A stretch of 64,000 bases of DNA from Octopus sinensis (lineage: Eukaryota), in assembly GCF_006345805.1 (NCBI RefSeq), contig NC_043021.1, positions 14,508,001-14,572,000 of the forward strand, read 5' to 3'. The position numbers and the translations under genes were made by a program. The notes under the pieces are model-generated. The model ran no database searches, was not told the origin of the DNA, and saw only the letters and a list, made by a program, of their open reading frames with translations. This document shows, piece after piece, positions 943-54,808 of this stretch. Numbering within the stretch: the stretch's first letter is position 1; every line of letters begins with the position of its first letter.

Positions 943-1232
943 ATATATATTTATTATACATCATCATCCCTCTCTCTCTTTCGGAGATGCACAAGCACCT
1001 ACACGCACATATACACACACGGCAGTAACTTCCGCCTGCTGAATTCAATCACAAAGCTTCGGTCGGCTCGGGGCTATAGCAGAAGACACCTACCCAAAGT
1101 GCCACGCAGTGGGACTGAACCCGAAACCATGTAGCTAGGAAGCAAGCTCCCTAACCACACAGCCATGCCCGCGCCTATACATATTGTGTATATTTGTTAA
1201 ACTTACTGAATATCAATTTTATTTCTCGGTAG

Positions 1233-2104
1233 CCCTTCAAAAACAAGGACAAAGTTGGAAGAGAAAGTATGAAGAAACATCACTGGAACTTGTCTCAGAG
1301 CGCCAGAAACTTCTGGACAGTCAGCATCAACCTGACTTCAACACCAAAGCGGAAAATAAGAAGCTCAGAAAAGAACTGATGTCAATAGAAAAACAGCTGA
1401 AAGAGGTTCAGTCTCAACATGAAATCCATTTGATCACCATGGAAACGGAAAGGATGACGAAAGAGTTGATCGAGGAACGTAAGCGCAGCGAGGACCGTCA
1501 TCTGCAAGAGGACATGTCGAGGTTACGGCATCAGTTGCAGCTGGCGAAAGAAAACAGTGAAAAATATTCAAAGCTTAAAATCGAAGTGGAATTATTGAGG
1601 GATGAGAATAATAATCTAAAGAAAGAGAAATTAGATGTTCCAGTTGATGATAAAGTAGATGAGGATAAAATAGATAAGGATAAAGATAAGCGGGATTGTA
1701 AATCCAGTAAAGAAGACATGGATTTAGGTGACATGTCAACGGCTAAAGGGAAGGAGGATTCGGAGGAGACATCAAAGGCAACAGTTGCTACGCAGACGGA
1801 TCTCGACAACAAGGAAACCTGCGATGTGTGTGAACTGATGAAGACCGAGAAGCAACAGTTGGCCGAAAAACTCAAAGTAAGTCAGAAAAAGATCCTTGCT
1901 TTCGAAGAAGACGTGGACGTTGCAGAAACTCCGCCATTCAGTCGAGTCGGTAGCAGTCGGCAGCTGCGGCGGGAGAAGATTTTGGCAGAAACTGCCAAGA
2001 TGGAAGCGGAATTTGCTCTGAAAGTTGCACAAGAGAAAATTCTCACGCTGACCAAAGACCTTGAAAAGCTTCAAGAGACTAAATGCCAAGAGCCTTCTCA
2101 AAAG
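1233..2104 (+). CDS. Host gene exon, 872 nt, coiled coil
   Basis: Acceptor tttctcggtAG, donor AAG|gtaaga; open frame ALQKQGQSW...EPSQK; phase 1 to 0. Confidence 0.9.
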
Positions 2105-2250
2105 GTAAGATTTCTTTTTTTTTTTTTTTACATTTTTAATGATGAGTTTTAATCGTTAGTGATCAGAATTTGCATTAAGACTTTTTGTTTTTTGTTTAAT
2201 TTGAAATTTAAAATATAATTCTGGAATCATCATTGTGTCCTATGTTAGAG

Positions 2251-2291
<41 letters not shown>

Positions 2292-4106
2292 ACCACCACC
2301 ATCACTACTACTACTACCATCACTACTACTACTACTACTGTTGGGTCTCTCTTTCTCTTTTTCTCTTTTACTTGTTTCAGTCATTTTGACTGCGGCCATG
2401 CTGGAGCACAGCCTTTAATTGAGCAACTCGACCCCGGGTCTTATTCTTTTGTAAGCCCAGTACTTATTCTATCAGTCTCTTTTGCTGAACCGCTAAGTAA
2501 CGGGGACATAAACACACTAGCATCGGTTGTCAAGCTATGTTGGGAGGACAAACACAGACACACAAACACATACACACACATACATATACATATATACGAC
2601 GGGCTTCTTTCGGTTTCCATCTACCAAATCCACTCACAAGGCTTTGGTCAGCCCAAGGCTATAGTAGAAGACACTTGCACAAGGTGCCACGTAGTGGGAC
2701 TGAACCCAGAACCATGTGGTCGGTAAACAAGCTACTTACCACACAGCCACTCCTACGCCCTCTGTTTTTGTTCTCTCTAACTTTTTATCTAAATTCTTTG
2801 TCACCCAGGAAGTTTGGTCGGTGCCATCAAAGTCCTGCAGTTGCCAAACGAACGACATTTCTCTCATTGAAGACAAAAATGAAGAATTCAAGAAACTAAA
2901 AGATGATCTTGAAATGGAAAGAAGACGAATTGTCACATCACAACAAGGTATGTATTTAGCAATTGTTCTCTTTCTCTTTGAAAATATGAGCCTTTGAACA
3001 TTATTTACATTATTTACAATTGACGGATATTTGTCCTCATCATGTTTGTTGTTAACACAATGTTTCGGCTGATATACCCGCCAGCCTTCATCAGGGGTCT
3101 TGGGGAAATTTCAATCCTGGGTTCTCATTCCTAAGGTGTTTTTGGATGTTATTATTATTATTATTCAGGATATCATCATCATTGTTTAATATCTGCTTTC
3201 CATATATATACAATAATAATAAAGGACGTTGTCGTATACATTTTTACAAACCAAGGACGTTATATAGACCTCCTTGACTAAAGTTAGAGAAGGGGTGCTT
3301 ATTATACACAAGGTTTAGGTTTTTCAGAGGTACAGCCCCCTAAAAATTCCCTGCGTATTATACTCAAGGGCAGACTATACTCGAGGATTTACGGTATATT
3401 AAATACATGACATACAAAAAAATGTATACATATAAAAATGTCCAACTTACACAGAGTACAAATGATATAGGAAATTAAAGGGGTGGTAGAAAGGTATTAC
3501 AAATCCAACAGCTTCCGTCTCGGGGCTCGGCAATCCATTATAATGTTTGTAATCTTATATAGTTACTTTTCTCTGTATTTTCATCTGCTTTGGTCTCTTC
3601 TTTCCTCTGTAGATCTTCAGCAGAAGTCCTCTATTATTGAAACCCTGAAAATGTCCCTAAAAGACCAAGATGACACCATTGTAGAGTTGGAAGATATTAT
3701 GAAGAGGAAGGAGTCCAAGATCAATACTCTTGAAGAAGGTATGTAGTTCAACGTATAGCAGACTTTCCAGATAATCCTTGCTGATCCAAGAAAACAATTT
3801 TCTACTCAGCTCTACATCCACTCCCAGACTAAGATTTAATTTTCCAAGGTCTATTCTCAAAATCTTTGTTATTAAGTGTCACTAAATGGCAGATTCAGTA
3901 GAGCTTCACATATGTGTTCAATGTTCTATTATATACACACACACACATATATATTACTCTGCGGAGTGGGTGGTGTAAGGAAGGGCATCCAGCCATAAAA
4001 ACCCTGCCAAAACAGACACAGTATCCTGGGATAGACTTCTACATGGCCAGCTCCTGTCAATCCATCCAGCCCATGTCTGCATCATGGAAGGTGGGTGGTA
4101 AATGAT

Positions 4107-4140
<34 letters not shown>

Positions 4141-7100
4141 TACATGCATACATACGTATGTATGTATATATATATATGTATGTATATATCATCATCATCA
4201 TCATCGTTTAACATCCACTTTCCATGATAGCATGGGTTGGACGATTTGACTGAGGACTGGCAAACCAGGCTCCAATCCGATCTGGCAGAGTTTTTACAGC
4301 TGGATGCCCTTCCTAACGCCAACCACTCCGAGAGCGTAGTGGGTGCTTTTATGTGCCACCGGCACGAGGGCTAGTCAGGCGGTACTGGCAACAGCCGCGC
4401 TCAAATGGTACTTTTATGTGCCACCGGCACGAGGGCTAGTCAGGCGGTACTGGCAACGGCCGCGCTCAAATGGTGTTTTTTATGTGCCACCTGCACAGGA
4501 GCCAGTCCAGCAACACTGGCAACAACCTCACTTGAATGTTTTTTCATGTGCCACCGGCACAAGTGCCATATATATATAGGACGAGCATTCTGCCAGTTAT
4601 GACAACGAGGGTCCCAGCTGAGACGATCAACAGAACAGCCTGCTCATGAAATTAAAGTGCAAGTAGTTGAGCACTCCACACCCACATGTACCCTTAACGT
4701 CACATGTACCCTTAACGTAGTTCTCAAGGAGAGTCAGCGTGACACAGAGTGTGACAAGGTTGGCCCTTTGAAATACAGGTACTACTCATTTTTGCCAGCT
4801 GAGTGGACTGGAAGCACCGTGAAATAAAGTGTCTTGCTCAAGGACACAACATGCTGTTGGGAATTGAACTCGCGACCTTACAATCATGAGCTGAATACCC
4901 TAATCACTAAGCCACTATTTCATTTTTATATCGCTCTTTCCTTGACTATTTGGCAAAATGTCACAAAAACTACTGGAATCTCTTGTTATGAAATAAGCCC
5001 AAAAGACTTGTGATATTAATTTCAAATTTTGGGTGGGGGATGTAAGTTGATTCATTTTATTGACCCCAAAAGGATGAAAGGCAAAGCCTACTCTGGCAGA
5101 ATTTGAACTCAGAACATACCATTAAGTATTCCACCCAGCATGTTAACAATTTTGCCAGCTTGCTGCCATTAAAAGACTTGTAATATTCTTCTCTACTCTA
5201 GGCACAAGGCCTGAAATTTTTGGGAAGGGGGCCAGTCAATTAGATCAACCTCAGTACACAACTGGTACTTAATTTGCCGACCCCGAAAGGATGAAAGGCA
5301 AAGTTGAACTCAAAACATACCACTAAGCATTCCACTCGGCATGTTAACAATTCTGCCAGCTTACTATTATCAAAGTGGAGGCGCAGTGGCCCAGTGGTTA
5401 GGGCAGTGGACTCGCAGTCGGAGGATCACGGTTTCAATTCCCAGACCGGGCGTTGTGTGTGTTTATTGAGCAAAAACACCTAAAGCTCCATGAGGCTCTG
5501 GCAGCGGGTAGTGGCGACCCCTGTTGTACTCTTTCGCCCCAACTTTCTCTCACTCTTTCTTCCTGTTTCTTGAGTAACGCTGCAATGGACTGGTGTCCCG
5601 TCCAGCTGGGGGGAACACATATGCTACAGGAACCGGGAAACTGGGCCCATGAGCCTGGCTAGGTTTGAAAAGGGCGCATGATAAATAAAAAAAACTGCTA
5701 TCGAAAGACTTGCAATATTAGATATTGTTTCCATCCATAACTTTTGCGTGTGTTTCTGTTTTTTCTAAAGAATTGCTACAAAAAGACGAAAAAGATAGAA
5801 AGAGAGTTGCTGCAACATCCGACAAATGTGAGCAATGCAGGTTATCACTTGTTGAAGGAAACGCACCAGAAACGATGGAGTCTTCCAATGGCTCGGAGGG
5901 CACCAGCAAAGATAGCAATCTTCAAACTGTTGTTTCGCACCAAACGAAAACCATCCAAACATTGAGTCACGAGAAATCCCAAACGGAACTCACTTGCAAA
6001 AACATGAACCTGGAAATGCAGCACATGAAGATGGCTTTGGCAGGTAAATTAAATTTATTAATTAGTGCTGCTTATTCTATAATGCCCTCGTTGGTTTCAG
6101 CCACTGGTTTCATGCCCTGGGGCATTTGTCTCTCTCTCTCGCTCTTAATTTTGGTTTGTATTTAAAACTGTATACAGCTATGGTACGACCACACTTGGAA
6201 TTCGCATCATCAGTTTGGAACCCCTATCTTGCTCAGAACATTGACCTCCTGGAATCTGTCCAGAGACGTGCAACCAAATGCATACCCTCCATCAGACACC
6301 TACCATATTCTGAGCGCCTTGTTTCCCTGGGCATGGATTCACTGAAGCTCCGGCGTCTGGCGACGGACTTGGTAAATGCCCACAAAGTTATCAACCACCT
6401 CACCAACAACAACACTGAACACCTTTTTGATCTCCATGTGTCTAACACACGTGGACATGCCTACAAAGTCAGAAAACAACACAGCTCCCATGACTTTCGG
6501 AAACATTTTTTCACGCTCAGAGTTGCTGAAGCATGGAATAAACTGCCTGCGTCAGTTGTTGACTGTCATGACACTGCATCCTTTAAGGCCCTCATGCTTT
6601 CTAAAATCCCCTAAAACTACACCTGATTATATATACACTTTAGATGAGTTGTAGTGCACCTGAGCACTGTACACAATGTTTTATTATTATTTATAAGTTA
6701 CCCATTTGCTTTATGTTTCTTTGTGGATAAAGGTGTGGCTGTGTGGTAAGAAACTTGGTTCCAAAACACATGGTCCTGGGTTCAGTACCACTGTGTGGTG
6801 ACTTTGCATGTGTCTCCTGCTATAGCCTCAGACCAACCAAGGCCTTGTGAGTGGATTTTGTAGACAAAGTTACCCATTTGCTTTATGTTTGTTTCTGGAG
6901 AAAGGAATGAGGATGGAGGCCTTCTATTCTGGTGAAGATTCAACGAAGTATGAAACATGTTGGGACAATATAAATATAAATATTGTGTGTGTGTGTGTGT
7001 GTGCATATGTATATATTATATATATGTGTGTATATGTATATATGTATGTATATATATATGTGTGTCAGTATGTGAGTATGTATATGTTATAAACCCAAAC

Positions 7101-13900: not shown

Positions 13901-15976
13901 TCAGAGTGCCATATTTTTTCAACTTTACTCCTAGAGGCCGTAACCCTACATATACCATTTTGGAATCAGGCTGACTCTATGAGTAAATTAAAAAACATTC
14001 CGGGTCGAATCCAGACCTGCAACCCTCAAATTTTGGATTCCCAAGTTTTCATTATTGCAGTTGTTTTCAGCAATTTTTTTTACATGATTTTTTACAACAA
14101 ATTTTTTTTGTACAATAACAGTTTTCATAACTTGGAAATAAATTTTGGGAATAATTGAAATTGATAGCAAAATCAATGATTATTTTTGGCAATATTTTAC
14201 ATGATTTTTTGCGACAAATATGATCATCTTTGGAGAAAACAATTGCAACAAATTCTCCAAAACAAGTCAGAAATCTGTTTGAGATCTTCCCATTTGGGGT
14301 CAGTAGCTTAAAAGCTATACACTGGCTTAAAATACAAGATATACATTAGCATAAAAGGAGGCGATTTAGGTGACTATCTGCTGCCCATTAAAAATTGTTG
14401 GTCTTGTAATTAAATTAGAAGCAGTTAATTCTAATTGCCAAAGTCATCAGCCTTCAAAGTAATTTAACTAGAAGTCTTGTAAGACATTAACACTGTTGAG
14501 CAGTAGTTCTCAACTGTCGTCCATGTAGCCCCTGAGGGTCCATATAAGATTTTGTGGGGTCCACACAACAAAATAGTAAATTGAGGATTCACAATAGTAT
14601 TTTAAGGGCCCCTGAAAACAATTTTGCTTTCGATGTATGTATTGGTAATTATTGCAAGAAACAGCTGGGTTTCTTTTTCTAAGATTTTACATAGTTCAAC
14701 CTCCACAAGTTAATGCCCAACGTCCGAAGATCCTTTCTCCCCACTTTGTACCATGTCTTCCTGGGTTTATTCATAACTCCATGTCCCCCTACAAAATAGG
14801 AATTTGAAAGAAGTTTCTATAAAACTAGTTTTTAAGCATAAAATGGCTATGTGGGGGCTGGGGGCGTCCACCAGAATAAAATAGTAATTGAAGAGGTCTA
14901 TAGGTAAAAAATGACGGAGAACCCCTACTGTAAGTATTTCTGCTTCAGTGTACCGATTTTTACCTCACACTGATAACAACACACCTGTACACATACACAC
15001 ACACATGCATGTGTGTGTATATATATATGTGTGTGTGTGTGTATGTGTATCATCATTGTCATTGTTTTAACTAGTTAGTTAGTTAATTTTTTTGGCCTAA
15101 AAAGCAAGGCCATGTAGGGGGACATGGAGTTATGTGCAGGGTTGTGTTCATGTAAAGAGTTCAGGCCACTTGTGGTCAAGGGAGACTTTGAACCGAGCGG
15201 TCGTCGGCATCTTCACCATCTCGTCCGGCAGCTTATTCCACGGTTCCGCAACCCGGACGGAGAAAGCCCCTCTCCTTAATATCCACCTTTCCATGATTAC
15301 ATGGGTCACGTGATATTTTTGAGGCAGATTTTTCTTCTATGGCTGGATGCCCTTCCTGTCCCCAACCCTTACTTGCATCCATCATCATCATCGTTTAACG
15401 TCCGCTTTCCATGCTAGCATGGGTTGGACGGTTCAACTGGGGTCTGGGAAGCCCAAAGGCTGCACCAGGCCAGTTAGATCTGGCAGTGTTTCTACAGCTG
15501 GATGCCCTTCCTAACGCCAACCACTCCGTGAGTGTAGTGGGTGCTTTTTATGTGCCACTGACACAGGTGCCAGACGAGGCTGGCGAAATGGCCACGCTCG
15601 GATGGTGTTTTTCGTGCCACCGACACAGGTGCCAGACGAGGCTGGCGAACAGCCACGCTCGGATGGTGTTTTTTACGTGCCACCGGCACGGAGGCCAGGC
15701 GGGGCTGGCACGGCCACGATTGGATGGTGTTTGTTACGTGCCCACAGCACATCCAATCAAAGTAATATTTCCCCGTGGCTGGACAAGTTTATCTTTGAAG
15801 ATTGGAAAGAAACAACAACGCTTTTATTGGCGGTGATGTCCTGTTACGATCATCACATGATGTTAAGACAACGGTACACACAAACACATGCATACATGCA
15901 CACACACACACACAAGCGTGCACTGACACAAACATACACACACTCACAAACACACACACTCATTCTCACTCACACA

Positions 15977-16486: not shown

Positions 16487-19044
16487 AAGCACGAACTCAC
16501 TCACACTCACAAACACACACACACATTCTCACACTCACACATACACAAACACCCTCTTTCGTCCTCACACACACACACACATAAACGATAGATTTCTGCA
16601 TAGATTCCGTCAACTAAATTCTCCATACATACATGACAAAGTGTAAAAGATTTAAGAGGAAAACAAGGTATAAGAGGCATCGGATGTTGTGTGCAAGAGA
16701 GGAGACTGCACTGGTTTGGTCTTGTGATGCATATGGATGAAGACAGCTGCATAAAGATATCATCATCATCATTTAACGTCTGCTTTCCATGCTAGCATGG
16801 GTTGGACGATTTTGACTGAGGTCTGGCGAACCAGATGGCTGCACCAGACTCCAATCTGATCTGGCAGAGTTTCTATGGCTGGATGCCCTTCCTGACGCTA
16901 ACCACTCCGAGAGTGTAGTGGGTGCTTTTACGTGCCACCGGCACGAGGGCCAGTCAGGCAGAAACCATTCTTACCTACAAAGTTTAATGACCAATTCACC
17001 AATTTGGCACTTAAGGTTTAACGAGATTAAAAATCATATATTTTAATTTCCGTATGTCTTTTTGGCCTCTTGTCCATTTGGTTTTATGTCAGTTTGGCAT
17101 TCTGTCCAAGCTCTAATTGTGGAGGGGACCTGTGGAAGAATAAACCCAGGAAGACATGGTACAAAGTGGGGAGAAAGGATCTTCGGACGTTGGGCCTTAT
17201 TGAAGAAATGACAAGGAACCAGGTGATGTGGCAATTTGCCGTACTTGATAAGACATGTCAAGCTAAGTAAAATCGTTGTCTTCCATACAGGCTTGTCCTT
17301 CCAGGGGCCGGTGCCACACAAAAAGCAGCTGTGCTGGTGCTGCATAAACACACCCATGCTGTTGGCATGTAAAAGGCACCCAGGGCTCTCTGTAAAGGGG
17401 TTGTTATTAGGAAGAGCATCCAGCCATAGAAACCATGCCACAACAGACAATTGGAGTCTGGACCACTCCCAGCTGGCCAGCTTGATGTCAAACTGTCCAA
17501 CCTATGCCAGCATGGAAAATGGACATTAACCCTTTCATTTCCAACCTGGCTAAAACCGGCCCTGGCTCTGTAGTACAAATGTCTTGTTTTCATAAGTTTT
17601 GAATTAAAATCTTCCACCAAACCTTAGTCACAATTTATGTTCCTAACACTAGCTGAATGATAACGAAGTCATTTTACTAAATTCTTTGTTATATTTAAAG
17701 TAATTGAAAGAAACACAGAGCATCATCATCATCATCATCACTTAACGTCCGTTTTCTGCGCTAGCATGGGTTGGACGGTTCGACTGGGGTCTGGGGGGCC
17801 AGGGGCTGCTCCAGGCTCCAGGCTGATCTGGCAGTGTTTCTACAGCTGGATGCCCTTCCTAACGCCAACCACTCCGTTGTTACCATATTTTGTCAACAGA
17901 AATATGGTAACAAAAGGGTCAAGGCATTAACCCTTTCATTACCGACCCAGCTGAAACTGGTTCTGTCTCTGAGTACAAATGTCTTGTTTTCATAAGTTTT
18001 GAATTAAAATCTCCCACCAAACTTTAGTCACAATTTATGTTCCTAACACTAGCTGAATGATAATTAAGTCATTTTACTAAATTCTTTGTTATATTTAAAA
18101 TTAATTAAAAGAAACACAGAGCATCTCAACAGAAATATGGTAACAAAAGGGTCAAGGCATTAACCCTTTCATTACCGACCCAGCTGAAACTGGTTCTGGC
18201 TCTGAGTACAAATGTCTAATTTTCATAAGTTCTGAATTAAAATCTCCCACCAAACCTTAGTCACAATTTATGTTCCTAACACCAGCTGAATGATAACTAA
18301 GTTATTTTACTAAACTCTTTGTTATATTTAAAGTATTTGAAAGAAATACAGAGCATCTCAACAGAGATATGGTAATGAAATGGTTAAATGATGATACAAC
18401 TTTAACAGGAGGCATATTCCCCAAAGTGCTGTACAGTGGGATTGAACTTAGAACTACATGATTGTTAAGCAAACTTCTGAACCATTCAGCCACAGCCATA
18501 CCTCCATATCCACCATGGGACTCTGTTCATTTTGTTTTCATTTTTGAATCATCAAAATATTTCTGTGACAAGCATGCAACATGTCATCGCTGTCAAATAA
18601 TATTATTTATTTATTTATTTTTAAAATTCGTCAGGAGAACAAGGAAGGGATGAAGTCGGGGCAGTGTCCTTGATCTTTAAAGAAGGCCCTTACCCTCACC
18701 TTCCTTGGTTTGATTGACGTCCATTCTGAACAGGTAACGTGTGTAGGTGATAGCAGAACAGCTGTTGGGACTGAACTCGAAACCATGTGGCTGGGAAGCA
18801 AACTGCTTAACCACACAGCCATAACTGCCAAAATAATGCTACAAAATTTCTGGTATAGTCACAGCCGTAGCTGTGTGGTTAAGAAGCTTGCTTTCCAACC
18901 CTATGGTCTTCAGTTCAGTCCTAGTGTGTGGCACTTGGGGTGTTTTCTATTCTAGCCTGAGCCCAACCTAGGCATTGTGAGTGAATTTGGTAGACAGAAA
19001 CTATATATATATGTATGTGTGTGTGTGTGCGTGCGTGCGTATAC

Positions 19045-19106
<62 letters not shown>

Positions 19107-19469
19107 AGTGACTGTTTACTAAGTAGCTTGTTTACCAACCACATGGTTCCAGGTTCAGTCCCACTGCGTGGCACCTTGGGCAAGTGTCTTCTACTATAGC
19201 CTCGGGCTGATCAAGGCCTTGTAAGTGAATTTGGTAGACGGAAACTGAAAGAAGCCCGTCGTATATATGTATATATATGTGTGTGTTTGTCCCCCTAGCA
19301 TTGCTTGACAACCGATGCTGGTGTGTTTATGTCCCCGTAACTTAGCGGTTCGGCAAAAGAGATCGATAGAATAAGTACTGGGCTTACAAAGAATAAGTCC
19401 TGGGGTTGAATTGCTCGATTAAAGGCGGTGCTCCAGCATGGCCGCAGTCAAATGACTGAAACGAGTAAA

Positions 19470-19510
<41 letters not shown>

Positions 19511-22500
19511 ACAATATTAAGGAATGGCCTTGATAGGCCATTCGACTCACTAGAAAGAGCAGCTAAACTCAAACCGCTAAATAGTTTTAATTCAGAAACC
19601 AAAGGAAAATAAAAGCATTTACCCGTATCATCTTTGGACTATGCATAGTTTCGACATACATATTGGCAAACTGATTTAATTAAATTAAATTAAATCTATT
19701 TGCCACTGGCCTGTCTCGTCAGCAAAGAAGCCAGGGAAATATATATCCACGAGGCGACAGCATCAACGCCTCGAGAATATATATTCTAAATTTTCAAAAT
19801 CTACCATCCCCGCGCCAAATTCTCCGCAGCAAATATAAACTGCTGATTTAATATCAGAATTAGCCAAAAAAAAATTAATTAATCAATATCAGGGTAGCAA
19901 AAAATTCAAAATCTGTGTGTGTGAATGTGTTTATGATTGTGTTGTGTTTGTTCCCTACCACAGCTTTGCAACCAGTGTTAGTTTGTTTACATCCCCATAA
20001 TTTGGATATATATATAGCCACCTCATTATTACTGTTTTTAACAGTAATAATACTTTACATATTTACTTTTTTATTGTTTACGACAGTTTCTTTTTAAACG
20101 GAGCTGGGACGTTTAAAGTTAGAAACACACATGAGTTGACATAATGAATATTTTAGAAATAGATGTTAAATACTATCTGCAACTGAGGATTGCGAAGCAT
20201 GTTTCTCATGCACAGCATGAAATCACTACCAGTCAAGTAGTGGGGTCAATGTAATCAATTGTCCTCCTACCCACCAAATTGCTGGCCTTGTGCCAAAATT
20301 TGAAACCATTATTATTATATCTGTACATCAATGAAATCAGATAAATCATTCAATGCTGGAAAAAGTAATGTTTCAAAAGGTCCCTGAATAAGGTTTTTTT
20401 TAAAGATGTATATATACATATATACATACATATACATACATACATATATATGTGTGTGTTTATATATATATATATATATATGAATGTATGTATGCTTGTA
20501 TATATGTAGGTGAGATAATAGTTTCAGTATTAATAGTGAAACTATTAAAACTGAAAGTATTACCTCACATTACAATAGAGATGTTATTGTTTCACTTTTG
20601 ACACTTAATACTGAAATAGTGAAAGAGACAAGAGATTGCTCCGGGCTCACATTTGGCAAGAAGTATAAAAGTTTTTGGGTCCATGACACCACATGGACCC
20701 AAAGTAAGGCATGTGTACAATTTGAATGAAATCGGTTGGGTAGTTCTCGAGTTTTAGTGATGCACACATACAGACAGACACACATTCTCAGTTTTATATA
20801 TATAGATAAATGAAACACCTATCTTTCCATAGGTGAATTATTCAAACTTAAAGAATTACGCTCAACACATGGCTACATGGCTATGATGCTCTCCCACTAC
20901 TCCTGCTTGTGATCAAAGATGCACATATCATCATTCGCTGTGCTCGACTGGTTAAAATCAAACAACTGATAAGCAAATCTGTGGTTTAGAACAAAAATGT
21001 TTCTGCGTTTGTTCGTTTTGGCAATGAAGTTTTTCAGGAGGATGTTCAAAGCATTTTTATTGCCCCTGACAAAAGTTTTAGGGGTGCATTTGACACTAGT
21101 GCATTCCCTGTTCCCAAGCCAACAAGAGAAAGTGAGAGAGATTTTGTATATGTGTGTGTAAAAGAGAGAGCTATTTGCATGAAAGTTTGTGTACATAAGG
21201 AAAAGAGTGGGTGTGTGTATACATGTTGAGAGAGAGAGATAGTGTGTTTGTGTGTGTGAGAGAGAGAGAGAGAGACAGATAGTGTGTGTGAGAGAGGGGG
21301 AAAGAAAGGCAGAGAGAAATAGATATAGACACTTCATGTGTAAAAGAGAGCATATATATGAGTATGTGACAGTGTGTGTGTATGTGTGTGCTTATGCATG
21401 TGTAAAAGAGAGAGAGAAAGGGTGTTTGTGTGTGTGTAAGAGAGAGAATATGGACAATACATGTGTAAAAGAAAGAGAGAAAGGGTGTTTGTGTGTGTGT
21501 AAGAGAGAGAATATGGACAATACATGTGTAAAAGAAAGAGAGAAAGGGTGTTTGTGTGTGTGTAAGAGAGAGAATATGGACAATACATGTGTAAAAGAAA
21601 GAGAGAAAGGGTGTTTGTGTGTGTGTGTAAGAGAGAGAATATGGACAATACATGTGTAAAAGAAAGAGAGAAAGGGTGTTTGTGTGTGTGTAAGAGAGAG
21701 AGAATATGGACAATACATGTGTAAAAGAAAGAGAGAAAGGGTGTTTGTGTGTGTGTAAGAGAGAGAATATGGACAATACATGTGTAAAAGAAAGAGAGAA
21801 AGGGTGTTTGTGTGTGTGTAAGAGAGAGAATATGGACAATACATGTGTAAAAGAAAGAGAGAAAGGGTGTTTGTGTGTGTGTAAGAGAGAGAATATGGAC
21901 AATACATGTGTAAAAGAAAGAGAGAAAGGGTGTTTGTGTGTGTGTAAGAGAGAGAATATAGACAATACATGTGTAAAAGAAAGAGAGAAAGGGTGTTGGT
22001 GTGTGTGTGTGTATGAGTAAGAAAGAGAATGCCTAGAAACGACATCGATGGTCACCAACGGTTAATAATAATTTGTGCAATAAATAATAACAATATTGTT
22101 TTGATGTTAATATCAGGTGACAGCAATCTCAAGTGAAACCCTTTGTCAATAATAAGCAGAGCTGCACAGCTTTGTCACAAACATGCAGAGAACAACATCT
22201 GTTTAAGTTTAACCATTCATTATAGATTTTAGACGGCTTAATCAAGAGGAAGTGCTGTAAACATGACTCCGTTGCAGGGTTACACAGTCTGCTGGTATTG
22301 GTGGTGGTGGTGGTGGTGATAATGGCAGGGTATGTAAAAGCAGTATTACCTGCAGGGTTAATCCCAAGGTACTGCTGGTACCCATTTACAGCTGAGTAGA
22401 CTGTGGCAATGTGAAATGAAGTGCCTTGCTCAAGAGACACAACACACTACTTGGCCTGAGAATTGAACTCACAACCTAATAATGGTACAAAGAGAAGTCA

Positions 22501-28500: not shown

Positions 28501-31500
28501 TCACTTGCATTATAGCTTTGTCTGGGGTGCCGGTGTTATATGTATGTATATTATTGTAATTATCAGTTTAGTAAATAAATAAATAAGTTAACATAATATA
28601 ATGTCTAAAAGTTGATGAACCACCCATTGATACCCTCCATTTTCTTATTGCTATATATATATGTACAGTGAAGAATTCCGGGTAGAGGTAGGGGTCCACC
28701 AAGGCTCAGTCCTCAGCCCCCTCCTATTTATCATAGTCCTCCAGGCAATAACGGAGGAATTCAAGACAGGATGCCCTTGGGAGCTCCTCTATGCTGATGA
28801 CCTTGCTCTAATTGCTGAGTCACTATCAGAACTGGAGGAGAAGTTTCAGGTGTGGAAGCAAGGATTAGAATCGAAGGGCCTTAGAGTCAATCTAGCTAAA
28901 ACCAAAATCCTAATAAGTAGGAAGGTAGACAAATCACAAACGCCTTCAGGTAGATGGCCCTGCTCGATCTGTAGAAAAGGTGTAGGTAGAAACTCTATAA
29001 GATGCACCAAGTGTAAGCTATGGACACATAAGAGGTGCAGCAATGTCAAAGGAAGGCTAACTAGGAAGATGGTTTTTGTATGTGGCAGATGCTCAGGAAC
29101 AATAAACACTGAAAATGCTCTGAGAAAAACTAGAAATAGTTGATAGCTTCCATTACCTAAGTGACCAAGTTAGCAGCGGGGGTGGGTGTGCTGAAAGTGT
29201 AACTGCTAGAGTAAGAATAGCTTGGCCAAAGTTCAGAGAGCTCTTACCCCTGCTGGTGACAAAAGGCCTCTCGCTCAGAGTAAAAGGCAGACTGTATGAC
29301 GTGTGTGTACGAACAGCCATGCTACATGGCAGTGAAACATGGACCGTGACTGCTGAGGATATGCGTAAGCTCACAAGAAATGAAGCCAGTATGCTCCAAT
29401 GGATGTGTAATGTCAGTATTCATACTCGACAGAGTGTAAGTACCTTGAGAGAAAAGCTGGACCTAAGAAGCATCAGATGTGGTGTGCAAGAGAGACGTTT
29501 GCGCTGGTATGGGCATGTGGCGAGAATGGATGAAGATAGTTGTGTGAAAAAGTGCCACACCCTAGCGGTTGAGGGAACCTGTGGAAGAGGCAGACCCAGG
29601 AAAACCTGGGACGAGGTGGTGAAGCACGACCTTCGAACTTTAGGTCTCACTGAGGAAATGACTAGAGACCGAGACCTCTGGAAGTATGCTGTGCGTGAGA
29701 AGACCCGGCAGGACAAGTGAGACCATAACCTGTGGCCTTCTACATGGGATGTAGCCAGCCCACTTATGCATACCTTCCCTTCTTGGGACACAAAACTCTA
29801 CTTGTGAAGACCTGTTGAGGCAAGTGAGAATCAGAATCAGAATCGAAATCGATCAATTGAAATTGCAGCTGAGATACCAGTGCCGGTGGCACGTAAGAGA
29901 ACCATCCGAACGTGGCCGTTGCCAGCGCTGCCCCAACTGGCCTCGTGCCGGTGGCACGTAAAAAGCACCATCCGTTCGTGGCCGTTGCCAGCCTCTCCTG
30001 GCCCCCGTGCCGGTGGCACATAAAAAGCACCATCCAATCGTGGCCATTTTCCAGACTCGTCTGGCACATAAACAGCACCCACTACACTCATGGAGTGGTT
30101 GGCGTTAGGAAGGGCATCCAGCCGTAGAAACATTGCCAGATCAAACTGGGCCTGGTGCAGCCTTCTGGCTTCCCAGACCCCAGTTGAACCATCCAACCCA
30201 TGCTAGCATGGAAAGCGGACGCTAAACGATGATGATGATGAGATAGATAAAACTTACTTAGAAATGGATGCGTGCGTTCCGTCATATAATAACAAATTAA
30301 TAAATAAAACATATGCATATATACATACATATATGTACGTACCTACATCTATATGTATATATACATGCATATATGGGTATAGGACATATATGTGTCCTGT
30401 ACCCATATATGCATGTATATATACATATAGATGTAGGTACGTACATATATGTATGTATATATGCATATGTTTTATTTATTAACTTGTTCATCATCATCAT
30501 CATCATCATCGTTTAGCGTCCGTTTTCCATGCTAGCATGGGTTGGATGGTTCTACTGGGGTCTGTGAAGCCAGAAGGCTTCATCAGGCCCAGTCAAATCT
30601 GGCAGTGTTTCTACGGCTGGATGCCCTTCCTAACGCCAACCACTCCGTGAGTGTAGTGGGTGCTTTTTACGTGCCACCCGCGTTATATATATATATATAT
30701 ATATATATACGTTTAAATATTTGTTGTGCAAGATTTATAATTTGTTATTTATTGGCTAAACTGGCAATATGACCATTCCGAAATATAACGATATATATAT
30801 ATATTTATATATATATCAGCATATAAAGTAACAGATATTTAACTAAATCTTTAGAATTTCAGTTATATTGCTAAATCAATTGAAACTCATAAGCTTTTTC
30901 CTTGAAGTTTATTCAAGAAAATAGGTTAAGGATTAAAATGCAACAGGTGGCTTTATAGTCAATGGGTATGTGTACAAGGTGGGCGAAGAGAGTGATGCCA
31001 AAAGATGAAGTGGAGGGTAAGTGGGCACCTTTTTCTGGTCCCTTTTGCCAAACAGCTCAATGAAGAATGATAATGAATGTTGATGATTGCTAATGATAAT
31101 TTTTTTTTGGTTTCTATACAGAAAAATCTTCTGAACAGTAGTAAATATTCCATTTCATCAAAAGCTCTAAACCTGTGCCACAAAGCAAATGTATCGGATG
31201 AGCAACCTAATTCATCAGCTCAGGTGTGTGTGATTTTAATTATTCATCATCATCATTTAGCATCTGTTTTCCATGCAGGTATGGTTCAGATGGTTTGACC
31301 AGAACTGGTAAGCCAGAGAGCTGGCTTACCAGGCTCCAATCTGGTTCGGCTTGGTTTCTACGGCTGGATGCCCTTCCTAACACCAACCACTTTGCAGAAT
31401 GTAGACTGGGTGCGTTTTACATGTCACCGGCACAGGTGCCTTCTGCGTGTCACCAGCATCTGGAGAGAAGGTAAAGTTGTTGATGACAAGGTGTCAGACA

Positions 31501-43664: not shown

Positions 43665-44376
43665 TTAGGGGGATGTGTTTAGAAGTGGTCTGTATTTATT
43701 AATAAGGTGGGATTCCATGGTTATTCGCTGGGTATGAGTGGCATTGTCTTTAAATTTGTAGAGGGGAAAGATTCTAAAATTGGGATGAAGTTGTGTGGCA
43801 CAGGTATCAATATGTGCACTAAGTGCTATTTTTCTGTATTCCTGTATTTTTATTTGGGATCTGTGGACAGTCATGCGTTGGCGGAGGCTGTTTTTAGTTT
43901 GGCCTATGTAGTGTTCATTACAGCCCGAGCAAGTTAAGACATATACTAGGTTTTCTGATGCGCATGTGAAGTTGTGTTTTACTGTGAAACGTTGTCCTTG
44001 TTTAAAAAGGAATTCCGGACCTTCTATTAGGTTGATGCATATACCACAGTTGGGTCTATTGCATTTGTTTACTGTGGGTTTAGTTGTTGTGGTTGGCAGT
44101 ACTTTGGCATTTGTTAGGATGGTTTTCAATGATTTGGGTTGCCTTTTGCTCTTTATGATTTCGTGTGTTAGGAGGATTTGGTTCGTTCTATGGTCCTTTT
44201 TTAATACAGGAATGTTCTGGAGGATGGTGTCAAAAGCTTCATTGTTGAGGGGGTTGTGTGTAGAGATGTATGGTAGAGTATGGGGTTTCGATGTAACAGG
44301 TTTAGGGCGTCTAAGTTCCTGTGTGCTGAGTTTTAGGGCGCGTTGGATCCCATTGTCAATTAGTGACGTGGGGTAA
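43665..44376 (-). mobile_element. Penelope-like element 3' fragment: linker, Zn finger and GIY-YIG endonuclease
   Basis: LPYISTHNP..IIKSKRQPKSLKTIL, KCNRPNCGIC, LVYVLTCSGCNEHYIGQT..RQRMTVHRS, MESHLINKYRPLLN; one frameshift upstream. Confidence 0.92.
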
Positions 44377-46194
44377 TCTCTCTTCCATTACTCCTCCTCT
44401 ACCACCTCTTGTCTCTATTAGTCTGTTTCTCTCATTCTTTTGTTTTTCATCCTTTTATCCTGGTTCTTCTGTCTTTCCTTTCTCCTATTCACATTCACAG
44501 TCACATTGCCTTGAACAAACAGAATCAACAGAGTGGACCTTTTAGACTTGCAAGGGATAGAGCAACCCTTGCAGTGCTGGTGCCACACGTTGTAAAGTGG
44601 TTGATAAATGAGTGGAAACAACATCGGTTTGAAAGGACGCTTTAGTCTTGCCAAGGACATGGTTGCCTCTCTAAAGCAGACGCCATGGTAAGAGATATCC
44701 AGCACATTCTGTAAAGCGGATGCTGGAAGGAAGGGCATCCAGCCATAGAAGCCATGCCTGAAATAGAACAAAGAAGCAAAATTGATCCCTGATCTATTGA
44801 ATCCTTTCGCATTCGGATCACTTTGTTAAATGTAATGCTTATTGATTCACATTGTTTGGAATTAATAATTCATTATTGCATGGCTTTGAAATTTCATAAA
44901 TTCAATTATTTTTTAGAATGACATTGTAGGGTAGGTGTGAGAGTCTGGCCCTGACCAGTTAAACTCTTAAGCATTCAGATTACTCTATCACATGTAATGC
45001 TTATTTATTCACATTGTTTGGAATTAATCATGCAATTATCTCATAAATCCATGATTTCAATGATGTGGTTATTCATTTTTAGAATGACATTTTTGAGTCA
45101 TTGTGCAAGGCCAGATCTGGTCAGTTTGAACATAAAACATACAGAATATTTTGGCCAGATGTGGCCTGTTCAAATGCCAAAGTGTTAACTCTTTTGATTT
45201 CAGTACACCTAAGACTGCCCCCTAGTTCCCGGATACAACAAATTTACAGTTTTAATACAATCTAAATTATTCAGTTAAAAAGGTAAAAAAGAAATTAAAT
45301 AATCAAAAATCTATGTTACCAAACTTTTGCTACTTCTCTTGAATTCTAGAGTTTTGAAATTGTCTCCTTGAAACAAGCCTAGTTCGTTGCAGTTCTTCTG
45401 AAAGCTTTTCGAGTCTTTTTTCTCTTTTTTTTACAGTAAAAAAATCCATACAACAGGTAATTTTATTGAATGCTAGAGTTTTTGAATTGCTTATATATAT
45501 ATGTATGCATAGAAATATTATTTCTACTCTAGGCACAAGGCCATGAAAATTTTTGTGAAAGGAGGCTAGTCAATTATATCGAACCCAGTACATAACTGGT
45601 ACCTGTTTTATTTACCCTGAAAGGATGAAAGGTAAAATCGACCTTGAACTCAGAACATAGTAGCAGATGAAATATTGCTAAGCATTTCGCCTGGCGTGTT
45701 AACGATTCTGCCATTTCGTGGCCTTTGTTTGCATAGAAATATCAATAGATTATTGTTTTCCTGTAGACCCAGCTGGGGCATGGTATTGAGTGATAAACCT
45801 GACACTTCTACCATCTAGGGTCAGCACCAACACTACCACTGCCATCGCCAATACTACCACCTCCACCTCCACCCCCATCACAAGCACAACTATCGCTGCC
45901 ACCACCACTATCACCACAGCTGCTATCACCACCACCACCACCAACTGTCATAAACACCAATGCAAATACAGGTAGCAAATCCTTCCCCCACCATCATCAC
46001 AAGAACAGCTGTCATCAACACAGCCACCTCCATCACCTCCACCTGTACAAATACTGGTACAACACTCACCACCACCATTTCCCTCACTGCTGCCATAAGC
46101 CCACTGACACCATTGCAACAATGACTACAATTGCCCCCCCCCCTCTTTCCCTCCATCACTGTCATTTTATTATTTAAGCAGACTTATCACACAG

Positions 46195-52195: not shown

Positions 52196-52980
52196 TTGAA
52201 TTGTGAGGTACTGAATGACCAGTTCAAAAGTGTCTTTACCAGCCTGTTGGAACACAGACAAGTGAATGAACCAGTGGCCTTCTTTGCCACCTCGCCTATA
52301 ACCAGCGAGGCAGTTACGATGGAATACATCGACATTAGCGAAGAAGATGTACTACTAGCGATAGATGAGGTGGATGCAAACTCAACTGCTGGTCCTGATG
52401 GTTTCCCAGCAATCATCTTCAAATCATGTACGCATGCCCTGGCAAAACTCCTCCATATTCTCTTCCAGAGCTTTGTTGCAAATGGCAGACCGCCAAGCAA
52501 GCTGAAGGAGGGAATAATATGCCCAATACATAAAGGGGGAAGTAGAGCAGATGCCAAAAACTATAGGCCTATCTCTGACTTCACACATCAGCAAAGTCAT
52601 GGAACGGATAGTCAGAGGGAAACTAATCACATTCCTTGAAGAAAATAATTTGCTGAGTTATACCCAGCATGGCTTTCAACCAAGTAGGAGCTGCCTGACC
52701 CAGCTCTTACAACATTATGACTGGGTGTTGAGGCAGTTACTCAACAACTCAAATGTGGATGTAATATACCTTGATTTTGCAAAAGCTTTCGATAAAGTGG
52801 ATCATGATATGATATGCCACAAACTGTGTGATCTCGGCATAGCTGGAAAACTTGGAGAGTGGTTACATAACTTTCTGAAAAGTCAGGCAGTGGTGGCCAA
52901 TGGAGCCACCTCAATGAAAACACAAATAGCGGTGTTCCACAGGGCACTGTCTTGGGACCACTGCTTTTTATAGTGACCAC
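52196..52980 (+). mobile_element. CR1/L2-group RT fragment, frameshifted
   Basis: GPDG, PIHKGG, NYRPIS|LTSHISKVMER, QHGF..RSC.TQL, YLDFAKAFDKVDH, GVPQGTVLGPLLF. Confidence 0.9.
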
Positions 52981-54358: not shown

Positions 54359-54652
54359 AAAGGTTGGAGTTCAATTATATCGAACAGGTTGCCAGCCGAC
54401 GACTATTCACAGGCGCGATCCCACTACTGCTCGACACGGGGCCTTTTGCCTGCTGCGTTTCCGCTCTGGGCCGAAGCGACCCGCCTTAGACAACCTGGTC
54501 CTGATGAGCTCCCTCTCCAGCACCATATTGATGCCGAGCTTAGCGCAGACACCCGATCACCATAGAAGACCAACTGCCAGGACTCCCATCCTCAAACCGG
54601 TCAACCAACCAAGCCTCCGAGTAGCTGGATTACAGGAGCACGCCACACCACA
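54359..54652 (-). ncRNA. 7SL: 7SL / SRP RNA, near full length (gene or retropseudogene)
   Basis: The + strand carries blocks matching the reverse complement of human 7SL as I recall it: CTATTCACAGGCGCGATCCCACTACTG, CACCATATTGATGCCGA.CTTAG.GC.GACACCCGATC, GAGTAGCTGG.ATTACAGG. Helix 8 on the - strand reads CCCAGAGCGGAAACGCAGCAGG. Alu-domain helices can still pair (GGTTGG/CCAACC). Confidence 0.9.
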
Positions 54653-54808
54653 TTACCATGTCTGCATTCCACAAATTCTTCCTCAACGGCAAAGTGGCAG
54701 AGTCATTAGAGCACCATTAGAGCAGAATGCTTTGAGGTATTCGTTTCAACTCTCTGTAGTGACAGTTCAAATCCAGCCTTTCATCCTTTCTGGGATCAGT
54801 GGTAAAGT

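What the first reader, a model, noticed from the sequence alone, without database searches (positions are those of the whole stretch)
19631..19728. Intact type I hammerhead ribozyme with a 63-nt extended stem II in an intron, antisense to the host gene
Seen: on the - strand every core nucleotide is canonical. Stem I UCUUUG/CAAAGA, core CUGACGA, stem II GACA/UGUC with G10.1-C11.1, GAAA, stem III from the palindrome ACUAUGCAUAGU, and a GUC cleavage site between 19637 and 19636. Stem II continues past an internal loop into a second helix (UGGCAAA..GAUUUAAU/AUUAAAUC..UUUGCCA). Stem I can extend past an internal loop (UGGCU/UGAUAC) into CCC/GGG, and another hairpin lies just upstream (19736-19787). 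Known: metazoan type I hammerheads occur in Penelope repeats, retrozymes and a few conserved introns, usually with a short stem II. Inference: the sequence is not repeated in this window and shows no decay, so it may be a functional self-cleaving RNA of an unannotated antisense transcript or retrozyme.
Basis: partly seen in the sequence, partly recalled or inferred. Interest (0 to 1): 0.88.

Follow-up and report, generated by a model that had tools for sequence, protein, structure and literature searches.

The report
Hammerhead ribozyme in an octopus retrozyme
The hammerhead ribozyme motif is real and complete, but it is one slightly shortened copy of a roughly 470-base mobile repeat (a "retrozyme" spread by Penelope-like retrotransposons) present hundreds to thousands of times in this genome, not a unique gene-specific ribozyme.

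Summary

Rfam's Hammerhead_1 model does not detect it, even at E<=10. I attribute this to the 63-nt helix II, but did not test that.

The sequence is not unique. A 201-nt query finds at least 47 scored copies at 91-98% identity, with 760 first-look candidates, in the 2.72-Gb genome.

The repeat unit is about 470 nt, non-coding, 35% GC and strongly self-paired. The window copy (19909-19493, -) is 0.89 of a unit.

The 62 copies examined show these features:
- 87% of 3' ends fall at two fixed sites, both abutting (TA)n.
- 5' ends are scattered.
- Eleven copies are longer than one unit.
- Head-to-head inverted arms are frequent.

This is the insertion signature of Penelope-like elements (PLEs). 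Intact PLE ORFs (RT plus GIY-YIG) are present in the genome. A second, sequence-unrelated family has the same long-helix-II hammerhead in 534-nt tandem repeats, with at least 40 copies 100% identical.

Dispersed copies show no detectable selection on the ribozyme.

Verdict: a solitary copy of a non-LTR retrozyme family. It is a new member of a known kind, with an unusually extended helix II. Self-cleavage, circRNA formation and the intron context remain untested.

The parts
19493..19909 (-). Solitary copy (0.89 unit, monomer positions m70 to m15) of the roughly 470-nt family-A retrozyme-like repeat
   Evidence: blastn against 19 and then 50 other genomic copies. It is the only family-A segment in the window.
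19631..19728 (-). Type I hammerhead ribozyme motif, from helix I 5' strand to helix I 3' strand
   Evidence: Sequence reading, descriptor hit with 6/4/4 bp helices, and the HHR-constrained fold within 2.1 kcal/mol of the MFE in a 123-nt context.
19716..19722 (-). Catalytic core C3-A9 (CUGACGA)
19653..19715 (-). Helix II, 63 nt. It has a 4-bp proximal stem GACA/UGUC, an internal loop GGCCAG/AUAUGUA and a distal hairpin at 19664-19705.
   Evidence: The distal hairpin is also picked up as a spurious mir-23-like hairpin. The length is 63 nt in 20 of the 21 copies with a recognisable HHR; a 71-nt variant is seen in L069.
19650..19652 (-). Core G12 A13 A14
19638..19649 (-). Helix III, the 12-nt perfect palindrome ACUAUGCAUAGU. 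It forms 4 bp plus a UGCA loop as a monomer, or could form a 12-bp intermolecular helix in a dimer.
   Evidence: Palindromic helix III is typical of metazoan type I HHRs (PMC4209133).
19636..19637 (-). Predicted cleavage site, between C17 (19637) and C1.1 (19636)
   Evidence: Position of the GUC triplet relative to the core. Cleavage itself was not tested.
19729..19736 (-). 5' side of the helix I extension: CCC plus the internal-loop strand UGGCU. CUGGC (19734-19730) is complementary to GCCAG (19710-19706) in the helix II internal loop.
   Evidence: No covariation is available.
19622..19630 (-). 3' side of the helix I extension (UGAUAC plus GGG)
19737..19786 (-). Stable hairpin upstream of the ribozyme, part of the repeat unit
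19472..19508 (.). (TA)n microsatellite at the 3' junction of the copy, the presumed target and priming site

Best explanation
The motif is the ribozyme of a non-autonomous retroelement. The element is a non-LTR 'retrozyme' of about 470 nt that I call family A, and the window holds one solitary, 5'-shortened copy of it.

Inferred life cycle:
1. Loci with more than one unit are transcribed.
2. The type I hammerhead folds while the RNA is nascent and cuts after GUC, leaving a 5'-OH and a 2',3'-cyclic phosphate.
3. Unit-length RNA is probably ligated into a circle.
4. A resident Penelope-like element (RT plus GIY-YIG endonuclease) nicks (TA)n microsatellites.
5. The nick primes reverse transcription on one of two AU-rich patches of a multimeric or circular template.
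6. This produces 5'-truncated copies, copies longer than one unit, and head-to-head inverted copies.

The long helix II is a tolerated, and perhaps structurally useful, extension. The canonical geometry is kept: 6 bp in helix I and 4 bp in helix II before the loops. An internal loop stands where loop 2 normally sits.

At this locus there is only one ribozyme. A - strand transcript could at most be cut once, at 19637|19636. No host function is implied.

Shown here: the motif, repeat status, unit size, insertion architecture, (TA)n junctions, presence of PLEs, and a second family with the same architecture.

Inferred: self-cleavage, circularisation, mobilisation by PLEs, and any role of the helix II extension.
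For: - Motif: complete core and helices. Chance expectation is well under 0.01 per window at this stringency.
- Repeat status: at least 47 copies at 91-98% identity with 760 candidates for the ribozyme region, and 1798 candidates for the 3' part.
- Unit: 470 nt, found from tandem junctions.
- Insertion architecture in 62 unique copies: 33 3' ends at m5-24 and 21 at m94-105; 11 copies longer than one unit (maximum 1.65). All but one of the 19 m94-105 junctions I inspected abut (TA)n or TA-rich sequence. Recurrent head-to-head inverted arms. These are the PLE hallmarks described in PMC8557442.
- 5' ends are over-represented just 3' of the cleavage site (8 of 62 against 2.6 expected, p=0.005, post hoc).
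- Ribozyme retention: recognisable in 21 of 24 copies that span it.
- Monomer RNA: 35% GC, no ORF, circular MFE z = -7.1.
- Autonomous partners: intact RVT_1 plus GIY-YIG ORFs of 765 and 867 aa, with 4846 GIY-YIG candidates.
- PLE fragments adjoin 3 of about 45 family-A loci at TA-rich junctions.
- Family B: different helix sequences (GUUUUGG/CCAAAAU, GCUA/UAGC, ACAAUUGU), the same core, and a 51-nt helix II. It occurs in 534-nt tandems with at least 40 copies 100% identical.
- A canonical short type I HHR in 431-nt tandems is also present.
- The features match published non-LTR retrozymes (PMC7229834; bioRxiv 10.64898/2026.07.22.740005).
Against: - Rfam Hammerhead_1 does not score the motif.
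- No cleavage, transcription or circRNA data could be obtained.
- Family A shows only partial tandems (up to 1.65 units) in the sample, not the long arrays typical of classical retrozymes. Its unit (470 nt) exceeds the published 170-400 nt range.
- No sequence similarity to the 3' region of the one PLE family sampled.
- In a 417-nt transcript the predicted MFE excludes the hammerhead, by 10.5 kcal/mol. While the RNA is nascent the gap is 2.7-5.4 kcal/mol.
- No excess conservation of the ribozyme among dispersed copies.
- Sampling is limited to the best-scoring, youngest copies.
Confidence: 0.8

Rival explanations
1. The copies are solo pseudo-LTRs, or 3' fragments, of an autonomous Penelope-like element that carries this hammerhead. 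They would then not be an independent non-autonomous retrozyme family.
For: PLE hammerheads lie in pLTRs, and most genomic hits are truncated PLEs (PMC4209133). PLE C-terminal coding fragments lie within 1.5 kb of 3 family-A loci. Only one PLE family's 3' region was examined.
Against: None of the 62 copies is colinear with an RT/EN ORF. In L075 the family-A copy starts at m195, after about 330 nt of unrelated sequence and a TA-rich run. There is no blastn similarity to 30 PLE loci or to L088/L089. Tandem junctions close the unit at 470 nt with no coding insert.
Confidence: 0.08
2. The hammerhead-like motif is a non-catalytic sequence coincidence inside an ordinary SINE-like repeat.
For: Rfam does not score it. 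The MFE of long transcripts excludes the core. There is no selection signal among copies. By my extrapolation, a 2.7-Gb genome would hold some tens of chance matches to a loose descriptor.
Against: All invariant core positions are present, together with G10.1-C11.1, A15.1-U16.1, GUC, the canonical 6-bp/4-bp geometry and a palindromic helix III (PMC4209133). A sequence-unrelated second family keeps the same core with different, still complementary, helices. The carrier repeat has exactly the insertion behaviour of the element class known to carry type I hammerheads.
Confidence: 0.08
3. A host-domesticated, locus-specific intronic ribozyme, like the conserved amniote HH9/HH10 motifs, that acts on an antisense or host transcript.
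For: The copy is intact and may lie inside a gene. + strand coding exons occur at 1139-6162.
Against: It is one of hundreds of near-identical copies. It differs from the family majority at 14 of 401 positions, as expected for neutral decay. It lies on the strand opposite the only recognisable gene. No gene model or conservation data support it.
Confidence: 0.03

Closest known systems
Metazoan non-LTR retrozymes (Cervera & de la Pena 2020, PMC7229834; Li, Clavereau & Pollet 2026 preprint, 10.64898/2026.07.22.740005)
   Same: One type I hammerhead per non-coding, AT-rich, highly self-paired unit of a few hundred nt. Head-to-tail repeats. Co-occurrence with autonomous PLEs. Helix I of 6 bp, helix II of 4 bp and a palindromic helix III.
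   Different: The unit is larger (470 nt against 170-400 nt). In the sample it occurs mostly as dispersed single, partial-tandem or inverted copies at (TA)n, rather than long arrays. Loop 2 is replaced by an internal loop leading into a distal hairpin of about 20 bp (helix II = 63 nt), so Rfam misses it. Expression as circRNA is not shown.
Penelope-like elements and their pLTR hammerheads (Cervera & de la Pena 2014, PMC4209133; Craig et al. 2021, PMC8557442)
   Same: Insertion architecture: 5' truncation, partial tandems, an adjacent inverted 5'-truncated copy, an extra 'tail' at one end, and a (TA)n target bias. Type I hammerhead with palindromic helix III.
   Different: No RT/GIY-YIG ORF and no similarity to the sampled PLE. 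The hammerhead is canonical, not the minimal dimer-dependent variant with a 1-bp helix III. The 'tail' here is about 85 nt rather than 30-40 bp.
Rfam Hammerhead_1 (RF00163) loci in cephalopods (for example 235 loci annotated in the giant squid, PMC6962438; seven scored hits in this genome)
   Same: Same core and topology.
   Different: Those have a helix II plus loop of about 14-16 nt and score 34-48 bits. This one is not reported even at E<=10.
Amphibian satellite 2 and Schistosoma Sm-alpha hammerheads
   Same: Type I ribozymes in repetitive, transcribed, non-coding units. Palindromic helix III that allows dimeric action.
   Different: Helix III here has 4 bp, so monomeric activity is plausible. 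Helix II is extended. The genomic distribution is dispersed rather than satellite-like.

Membership tests
Hammerhead ribozyme, type I | Invariant core C3 U4 G5 A6 N7 G8 A9, G12 A13 A14, the A15.1-U16.1 pair, and H17 (not G) | tested here: met
   CUGACGA 19722-19716, GAA 19652-19650, A 19649 paired with U 19638, C17 19637
Hammerhead ribozyme, type I | Three helices around the core with helix I open. Canonical metazoan geometry: helix I about 6 bp, helix II about 4 bp, short palindromic helix III. | tested here: met
   Helices of 6/4/4 bp, with a 12-nt palindrome in helix III. Geometry as described in PMC4209133.
Hammerhead ribozyme, type I | Scores above the Rfam RF00163 gathering threshold (34 bits) | tested here: not met
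   No hit at the gathering score or at E<=10. I attribute this to the 55-nt insertion in place of loop 2, but could not test it by deleting the insertion.
Hammerhead ribozyme, type I | Tertiary contact between helix I and helix II loops | tested here: inconclusive
   Internal loops lie at the expected distances. CUGGC and GCCAG are complementary, but the same pairing forms a competing hairpin. No informative covariation in 26 copies.
Hammerhead ribozyme, type I | The catalytic fold is energetically accessible | tested here: inconclusive
   2.1 kcal/mol above the MFE in 123 nt, 2.7-5.4 kcal/mol while nascent, and 10.5 kcal/mol in 417 nt. Tertiary energy is not modelled.
Hammerhead ribozyme, type I | Mg2+-dependent self-cleavage at the predicted site | not testable with these tools
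   Requires an in vitro transcription assay.
Non-LTR retrozyme | Non-coding, low-GC unit of a few hundred nt with one type I hammerhead | tested here: met
   Unit of 470 nt, 35% GC, no ORF of the element's own.
Non-LTR retrozyme | Head-to-tail tandem arrangement, dimers to multimers | tested here: inconclusive
   11 of 62 copies exceed one unit, with a maximum of 1.65. One locus (L013) holds two ribozyme positions. No long arrays were seen, but only the best-scoring copies were sampled. The window copy is solitary.
Non-LTR retrozyme | Highly self-paired monomer RNA | tested here: met
   Circular MFE -143 kcal/mol, z = -7.1. Window copy z = -4.7.
Non-LTR retrozyme | Co-existence with autonomous PLEs | tested here: met
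   147 scored GIY-YIG hits and 4846 candidates. ORFs of 765 and 867 aa with RVT_1 plus GIY-YIG.
Non-LTR retrozyme | Expression as linear and circular unit-length RNA | not testable with these tools
   No transcriptome data were available.
Penelope-like element (autonomous) | ORF encoding RT and GIY-YIG endonuclease within the element | tested here: not met
   No such ORF in or next to the window copy. The nearest PLE remnant is 24 kb away, at 43668-44387.
Penelope-like element (insertion mechanism) | 5' truncation, partial tandems, an adjacent inverted 5'-truncated copy, an end 'tail', and microsatellite targets | tested here: met
   compared with the description in PMC8557442.
Conserved intronic hammerhead (HH9/HH10 type) | Single-copy locus conserved at orthologous positions | tested here: not met
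   Multi-copy, 91-98% identical repeats. Orthology could not be tested.

The most novel reading that the evidence does not exclude
Octopus genomes may carry a structurally distinct subclass of type I hammerheads. In it, loop 2 is replaced by an internal loop and a long distal hairpin, giving a helix II of 50-63 nt. The subclass would be present in at least two sequence-unrelated retrozyme families, one of them currently active (100%-identical 534-nt tandem copies). It would be invisible to Rfam-based annotation and would yield abundant circRNAs of about 470 and 534 nt. In family A, the CUGGC/GCCAG complementarity would act as a switch between the catalytic fold and a stable inactive fold.
Probability: 0.3. 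Interest if true: 0.5.

Novelty: new member of a known kind. Interest (0 to 1): 0.33.

Why it matters
The result turns an apparently unique 'intronic ribozyme' into what it is: one copy of a mobile ribozyme-bearing repeat.

It also shows that standard covariance-model annotation misses whole families of hammerheads in cephalopods because of a long helix II. Counts of Hammerhead_1 loci in these genomes are therefore underestimates.

The junction data are two fixed 3' ends at (TA)n, copies longer than one unit, and inverted arms. They give sequence-level support for the proposal that animal retrozymes are copied from multimeric or circular RNA by Penelope-like machinery.

If the families are expressed, octopus would be a new system for ribozyme-derived circRNAs.

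Tried and rejected
- Rfam at the gathering score and at E<=10 gave no hammerhead hit at the locus. The only hits were spurious miRNA-like matches to hairpins and inverted arms.
- I first took the unit to be 401 nt starting at window 19909. That was an artefact of using the window flank in the query. Tandem junctions showed a 470-nt unit.
- An apparent two-fold lower substitution density in the ribozyme disappeared when copies were ascertained on the 3' part instead. It was an ascertainment bias.
- I looked for an autonomous PLE sharing sequence with the unit and found none: blastn of the unit against 30 GIY-YIG loci and two 8-kb PLE loci, and comparison of regions downstream of PLE ORFs.
- Rfam on 20 PLE loci gave no hammerhead.
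- I tested whether truncated copies start exactly at the cleavage site. They do not. They cluster 4-15 nt downstream, and 351 is the commonest start.
- I looked for covariation supporting a loop-loop pairing and found none that was informative.
- I tried to define the host gene. A homology search with the 337-aa exon returned only three unnamed proteins, Pfam gave nothing, and no downstream + strand exons were recognisable.
Full report
**Observation**

Reading the - strand of 19500-19900 shows the motif exactly as described.
- Helix I: UCUUUG (19728-19723) pairs with CAAAGA (19636-19631).
- Core: CUGACGA (19722-19716).
- Helix II: GACA (19715-19712) pairs with UGUC (19656-19653).
- G12-A14: GAA (19652-19650).
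- Helix III: the 12-nt palindrome ACUAUGCAUAGU (19649-19638), which gives 4 bp plus a UGCA loop.
- Cleavage triplet: GUC, with C17 at 19637.

Helix II totals 63 nt. After the internal loop GGCCAG/AUAUGUA it continues into a hairpin of about 20 bp at 19705-19664. Helix I extends past UGGCU/UGAUAC into CCC/GGG. The upstream hairpin is at 19786-19737.

A structure descriptor I wrote finds the motif with helices of 6/4/4 bp. It finds only one other candidate in the window, a weak chance-level one at 31222-31142. In 150 dinucleotide shuffles of the window the loose descriptor hit 0.067 times per window and the 6/4/4 criterion never hit.

Rfam reports no hammerhead at the gathering score or at E<=10 on 19400-20000. 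Rfam Hammerhead_1 does find short canonical hammerheads elsewhere in this genome. I therefore attribute the miss to the 55-nt insertion where loop 2 would be, but I could not test this directly.

**It is a repeat**

The window is G000:C25:14508001-14572000 of a 2.72-Gb assembly. That size agrees with the published Octopus sinensis assembly (PMC12564688). This is an inference from the size alone.

A 201-nt query (19600-19800) has at least 47 scored matches at 91-98% identity out of 760 first-look candidates. The 3' part of the element alone has 1798 candidates, as expected if many copies are 5'-truncated.

Alignment of the flanks first suggested a 401-nt unit. Tandem junctions then showed that a conserved segment of about 70 nt joins the end of one unit to the start of the next, so the unit is 470 nt. 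I number the unit from the first base after ...AATATTGTTG. In these coordinates the ribozyme is m251-348 and cleavage follows m342.

The window copy runs from m70 (19909) to about m15 (19493), which is 0.89 of a unit. It ends in the (TA)n run at 19472-19508. It is the only family-A segment in the window.

**How the copies are built**

Among 62 unique copies in the loci I held:
- 3' ends fall at two sites, m5-24 (33 copies) and m94-105 (21 copies).
- For the m94-105 class I inspected 19 junctions; all but one abut a (TA)n or TA-rich run, at short AU-rich patches of the element. The m5-24 class ends in a TA-rich stretch of the unit next to (TA)n where I looked.
- 5' ends are scattered.
- Eleven copies exceed one unit, up to 1.65.
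- Many loci consist of two arms joined head to head. One arm usually ends at m15 and the other at about m100.

Two alternative 3' ends 85 nt apart, together with copies longer than a unit, mean the template continued past the 'end'. The template was therefore multimeric or circular.

5' truncation, partial tandems, an adjacent inverted 5'-truncated copy, an extra tail at one end and a (TA)n bias are the features listed for Penelope-like elements (PLEs) in PMC8557442. L1-type twin priming does not fit, because both arms carry the same 3' terminal sequence.

5' ends are over-represented at m347-358, just 3' of the cleavage site (8 of 62 against 2.6 expected, p=0.005). The window for this test was chosen after looking at the data, and the commonest start is m351, not m343. 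This fits reverse transcriptase running off, or stalling, at a cleaved or folded ribozyme. It is only suggestive.

**Autonomous partners**

The genome has many GIY-YIG hits: 147 scored and 4846 candidates, several in ORFs of 600-880 aa. Two ORFs, of 765 and 867 aa, carry RVT_1 followed by GIY-YIG. This is the canonical PLE layout.

The 470-nt unit shows no blastn similarity to 30 PLE loci or to two 8-kb PLE loci. None of the 62 copies is colinear with a PLE ORF.

PLE C-terminal fragments nevertheless lie within 1.5 kb of three of about 45 family-A loci. In L075 the junction is a TA-rich microsatellite. Shared target sites would explain this. A PLE remnant also lies in the window at 43668-44387.

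**Other hammerhead families in the same genome**

- Canonical short type I hammerheads sit in 431-nt tandem repeats.
- Next to a PLE in L089 I found family B. Its sequence is GUUUUGG-CUGACGA-GCUA...UAGC-GAAA-CAAUUG-UC-CCAAAAU. It has the same core as family A, different but still complementary helices, a palindromic helix III, and a 51-nt helix II that again passes through an internal loop into a long hairpin.
- Family B has at least 40 copies 100% identical over 201 nt, 919 candidates, and tandem spacings of 533-535 nt. It looks recently active.
- A third candidate with a helix II of about 59 nt and an extra A after A9 lies at L089:5537. I did not evaluate it further.

Two unrelated families with the same architecture argue that the motif is a working ribozyme and that the long helix II is a recurrent design in this genome.

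**Selection and age**

The ribozyme is recognisable in 21 of 24 copies that span it. An apparent deficit of substitutions in the ribozyme (1.25% against about 2.9%) was an ascertainment artefact. In copies found through the 3' part, the density is 1.9% in the ribozyme against 2.6% in the 5' part (p=0.18).

The window copy differs from the family majority at 14 of 401 positions, one of them in the distal part of helix II. Its intactness is what a young neutral copy would show.

**Folding**

- In a 123-nt context the hammerhead fold is 2.1 kcal/mol above the MFE.
- With the upstream part of the element included, the gap is 2.7-5.4 kcal/mol while the RNA is nascent.
- Once the downstream UCCUUUGG is made, the gap is 10.5 kcal/mol. 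That segment captures CAAAGA, and CUGGC/GCCAG closes a hairpin over the core.
- The monomer as a circle is very stable (z = -7.1).

A stable non-catalytic conformation alongside a transient catalytic one is familiar from viroid and retrozyme RNAs. I therefore do not count this as a refutation, but it lowers confidence in efficient cleavage of long transcripts. The CUGGC/GCCAG complementarity could instead be a loop-loop contact in the active fold. The copies carry no informative covariation on this point.

**Context of the locus**

Recognisable + strand coding exons (a coiled-coil protein with unnamed homologues) lie at 1139-6162 only. I could not establish whether 19.6 kb is intronic. Nothing suggests a function for the host.

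**Comparison with known systems**

The element works like, and fits most tested criteria of, the metazoan non-LTR retrozymes of PMC7229834. A 2026 preprint derives these from PLE pLTRs (10.64898/2026.07.22.740005).

It differs in three ways:
- unit size (470 nt against 170-400 nt);
- a mainly dispersed rather than arrayed distribution at (TA)n;
- the extended helix II.

My full-text searches for hammerhead ribozymes in octopus or cephalopods returned only Rfam-type counts, such as 235 Hammerhead_1 loci in the giant squid, and general PLE surveys.

**Verdict**

This is a real, complete hammerhead motif that belongs to a mobile repeat. It is a new member of a known kind with a notable structural variation. 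Catalysis, circRNA formation and the mobilising PLE remain to be shown.

Noticed in passing
window 54359-54656 (-): Full-length metazoan signal recognition particle (7SL) RNA, 209 bits against a gathering score of 70. It is probably a genuine SRP RNA gene.
   Followed up: no
window 43668-44387 (-): Remnant of a Penelope-like element. A 240-aa open frame carries a GIY-YIG domain and is 62% identical to the C-terminal third of an intact PLE ORF from L089.
   Followed up: partly
window 28631-29140 (+) and 52518-52970 (+): Reverse-transcriptase fragments (RVT_1; the first is followed by a PHD-like finger) from other retroelements.
   Followed up: partly
window 1139-2149, about 2850-2960, about 3620-3743, about 5760-6162 (+): Exon-like open frames encoding a charged coiled-coil protein. 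Unnamed homologues exist (best 78% identity) and there is no Pfam domain. This is the only recognisable host gene, and it is on the strand opposite the ribozyme.
   Followed up: partly
L089:6622-6705 (+), L089:6136-6053 (-); tandem loci such as G000:C2:111935326-111936595: Family B, a second sequence-unrelated type I hammerhead with a 51-nt helix II. It sits in 534-nt tandem repeats with at least 40 copies 100% identical over 201 nt, so it is probably a currently active retrozyme.
   Followed up: partly
L089:5537-5640 (+): A third hammerhead-like motif, with a helix II of about 59 nt, an extra A after A9 and a 1-bp helix III with the palindromic loop CAUAUG (PLE 'minimal' style). It lies about 340 nt beyond the apparent 3' end of an intact PLE.
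   Followed up: no
L090:3366-3838 (-) = G000:C16:25146363-25146839: Canonical short type I hammerheads (Rfam 34 bits) in a 431-nt tandem repeat, a classical retrozyme arrangement in the same genome.
   Followed up: partly
L075, L008/L076, L015: PLE C-terminal coding fragments lie within 1.5 kb of three of about 45 family-A loci, more than the GIY-YIG density would predict. In L075 the junction is a TA-rich microsatellite.
   Followed up: partly
family-A copies, monomer positions m347-358: Hot spot of 5' truncation points 4-15 nt downstream of the predicted cleavage site (8 of 62 copies). Four copies, from three loci, start at exactly m351.
   Followed up: partly
window 21331-22138: Minisatellite of 63-65-bp units (at least 9 copies), rich in GT/GA.
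   Followed up: no
window 15380-15548, 16758-16929, 17727-17896; also 19120-19500: Several copies of other short interspersed repeats. The one at 19120-19500 abuts the same (TA)n tract as the hammerhead element and recurs in other loci in various orientations.
   Followed up: no
window 31142-31222 (-): A weak hammerhead-like match (helices 4/6/2 bp with G-U pairs, 55-nt helix II) at the level expected by chance.
   Followed up: no
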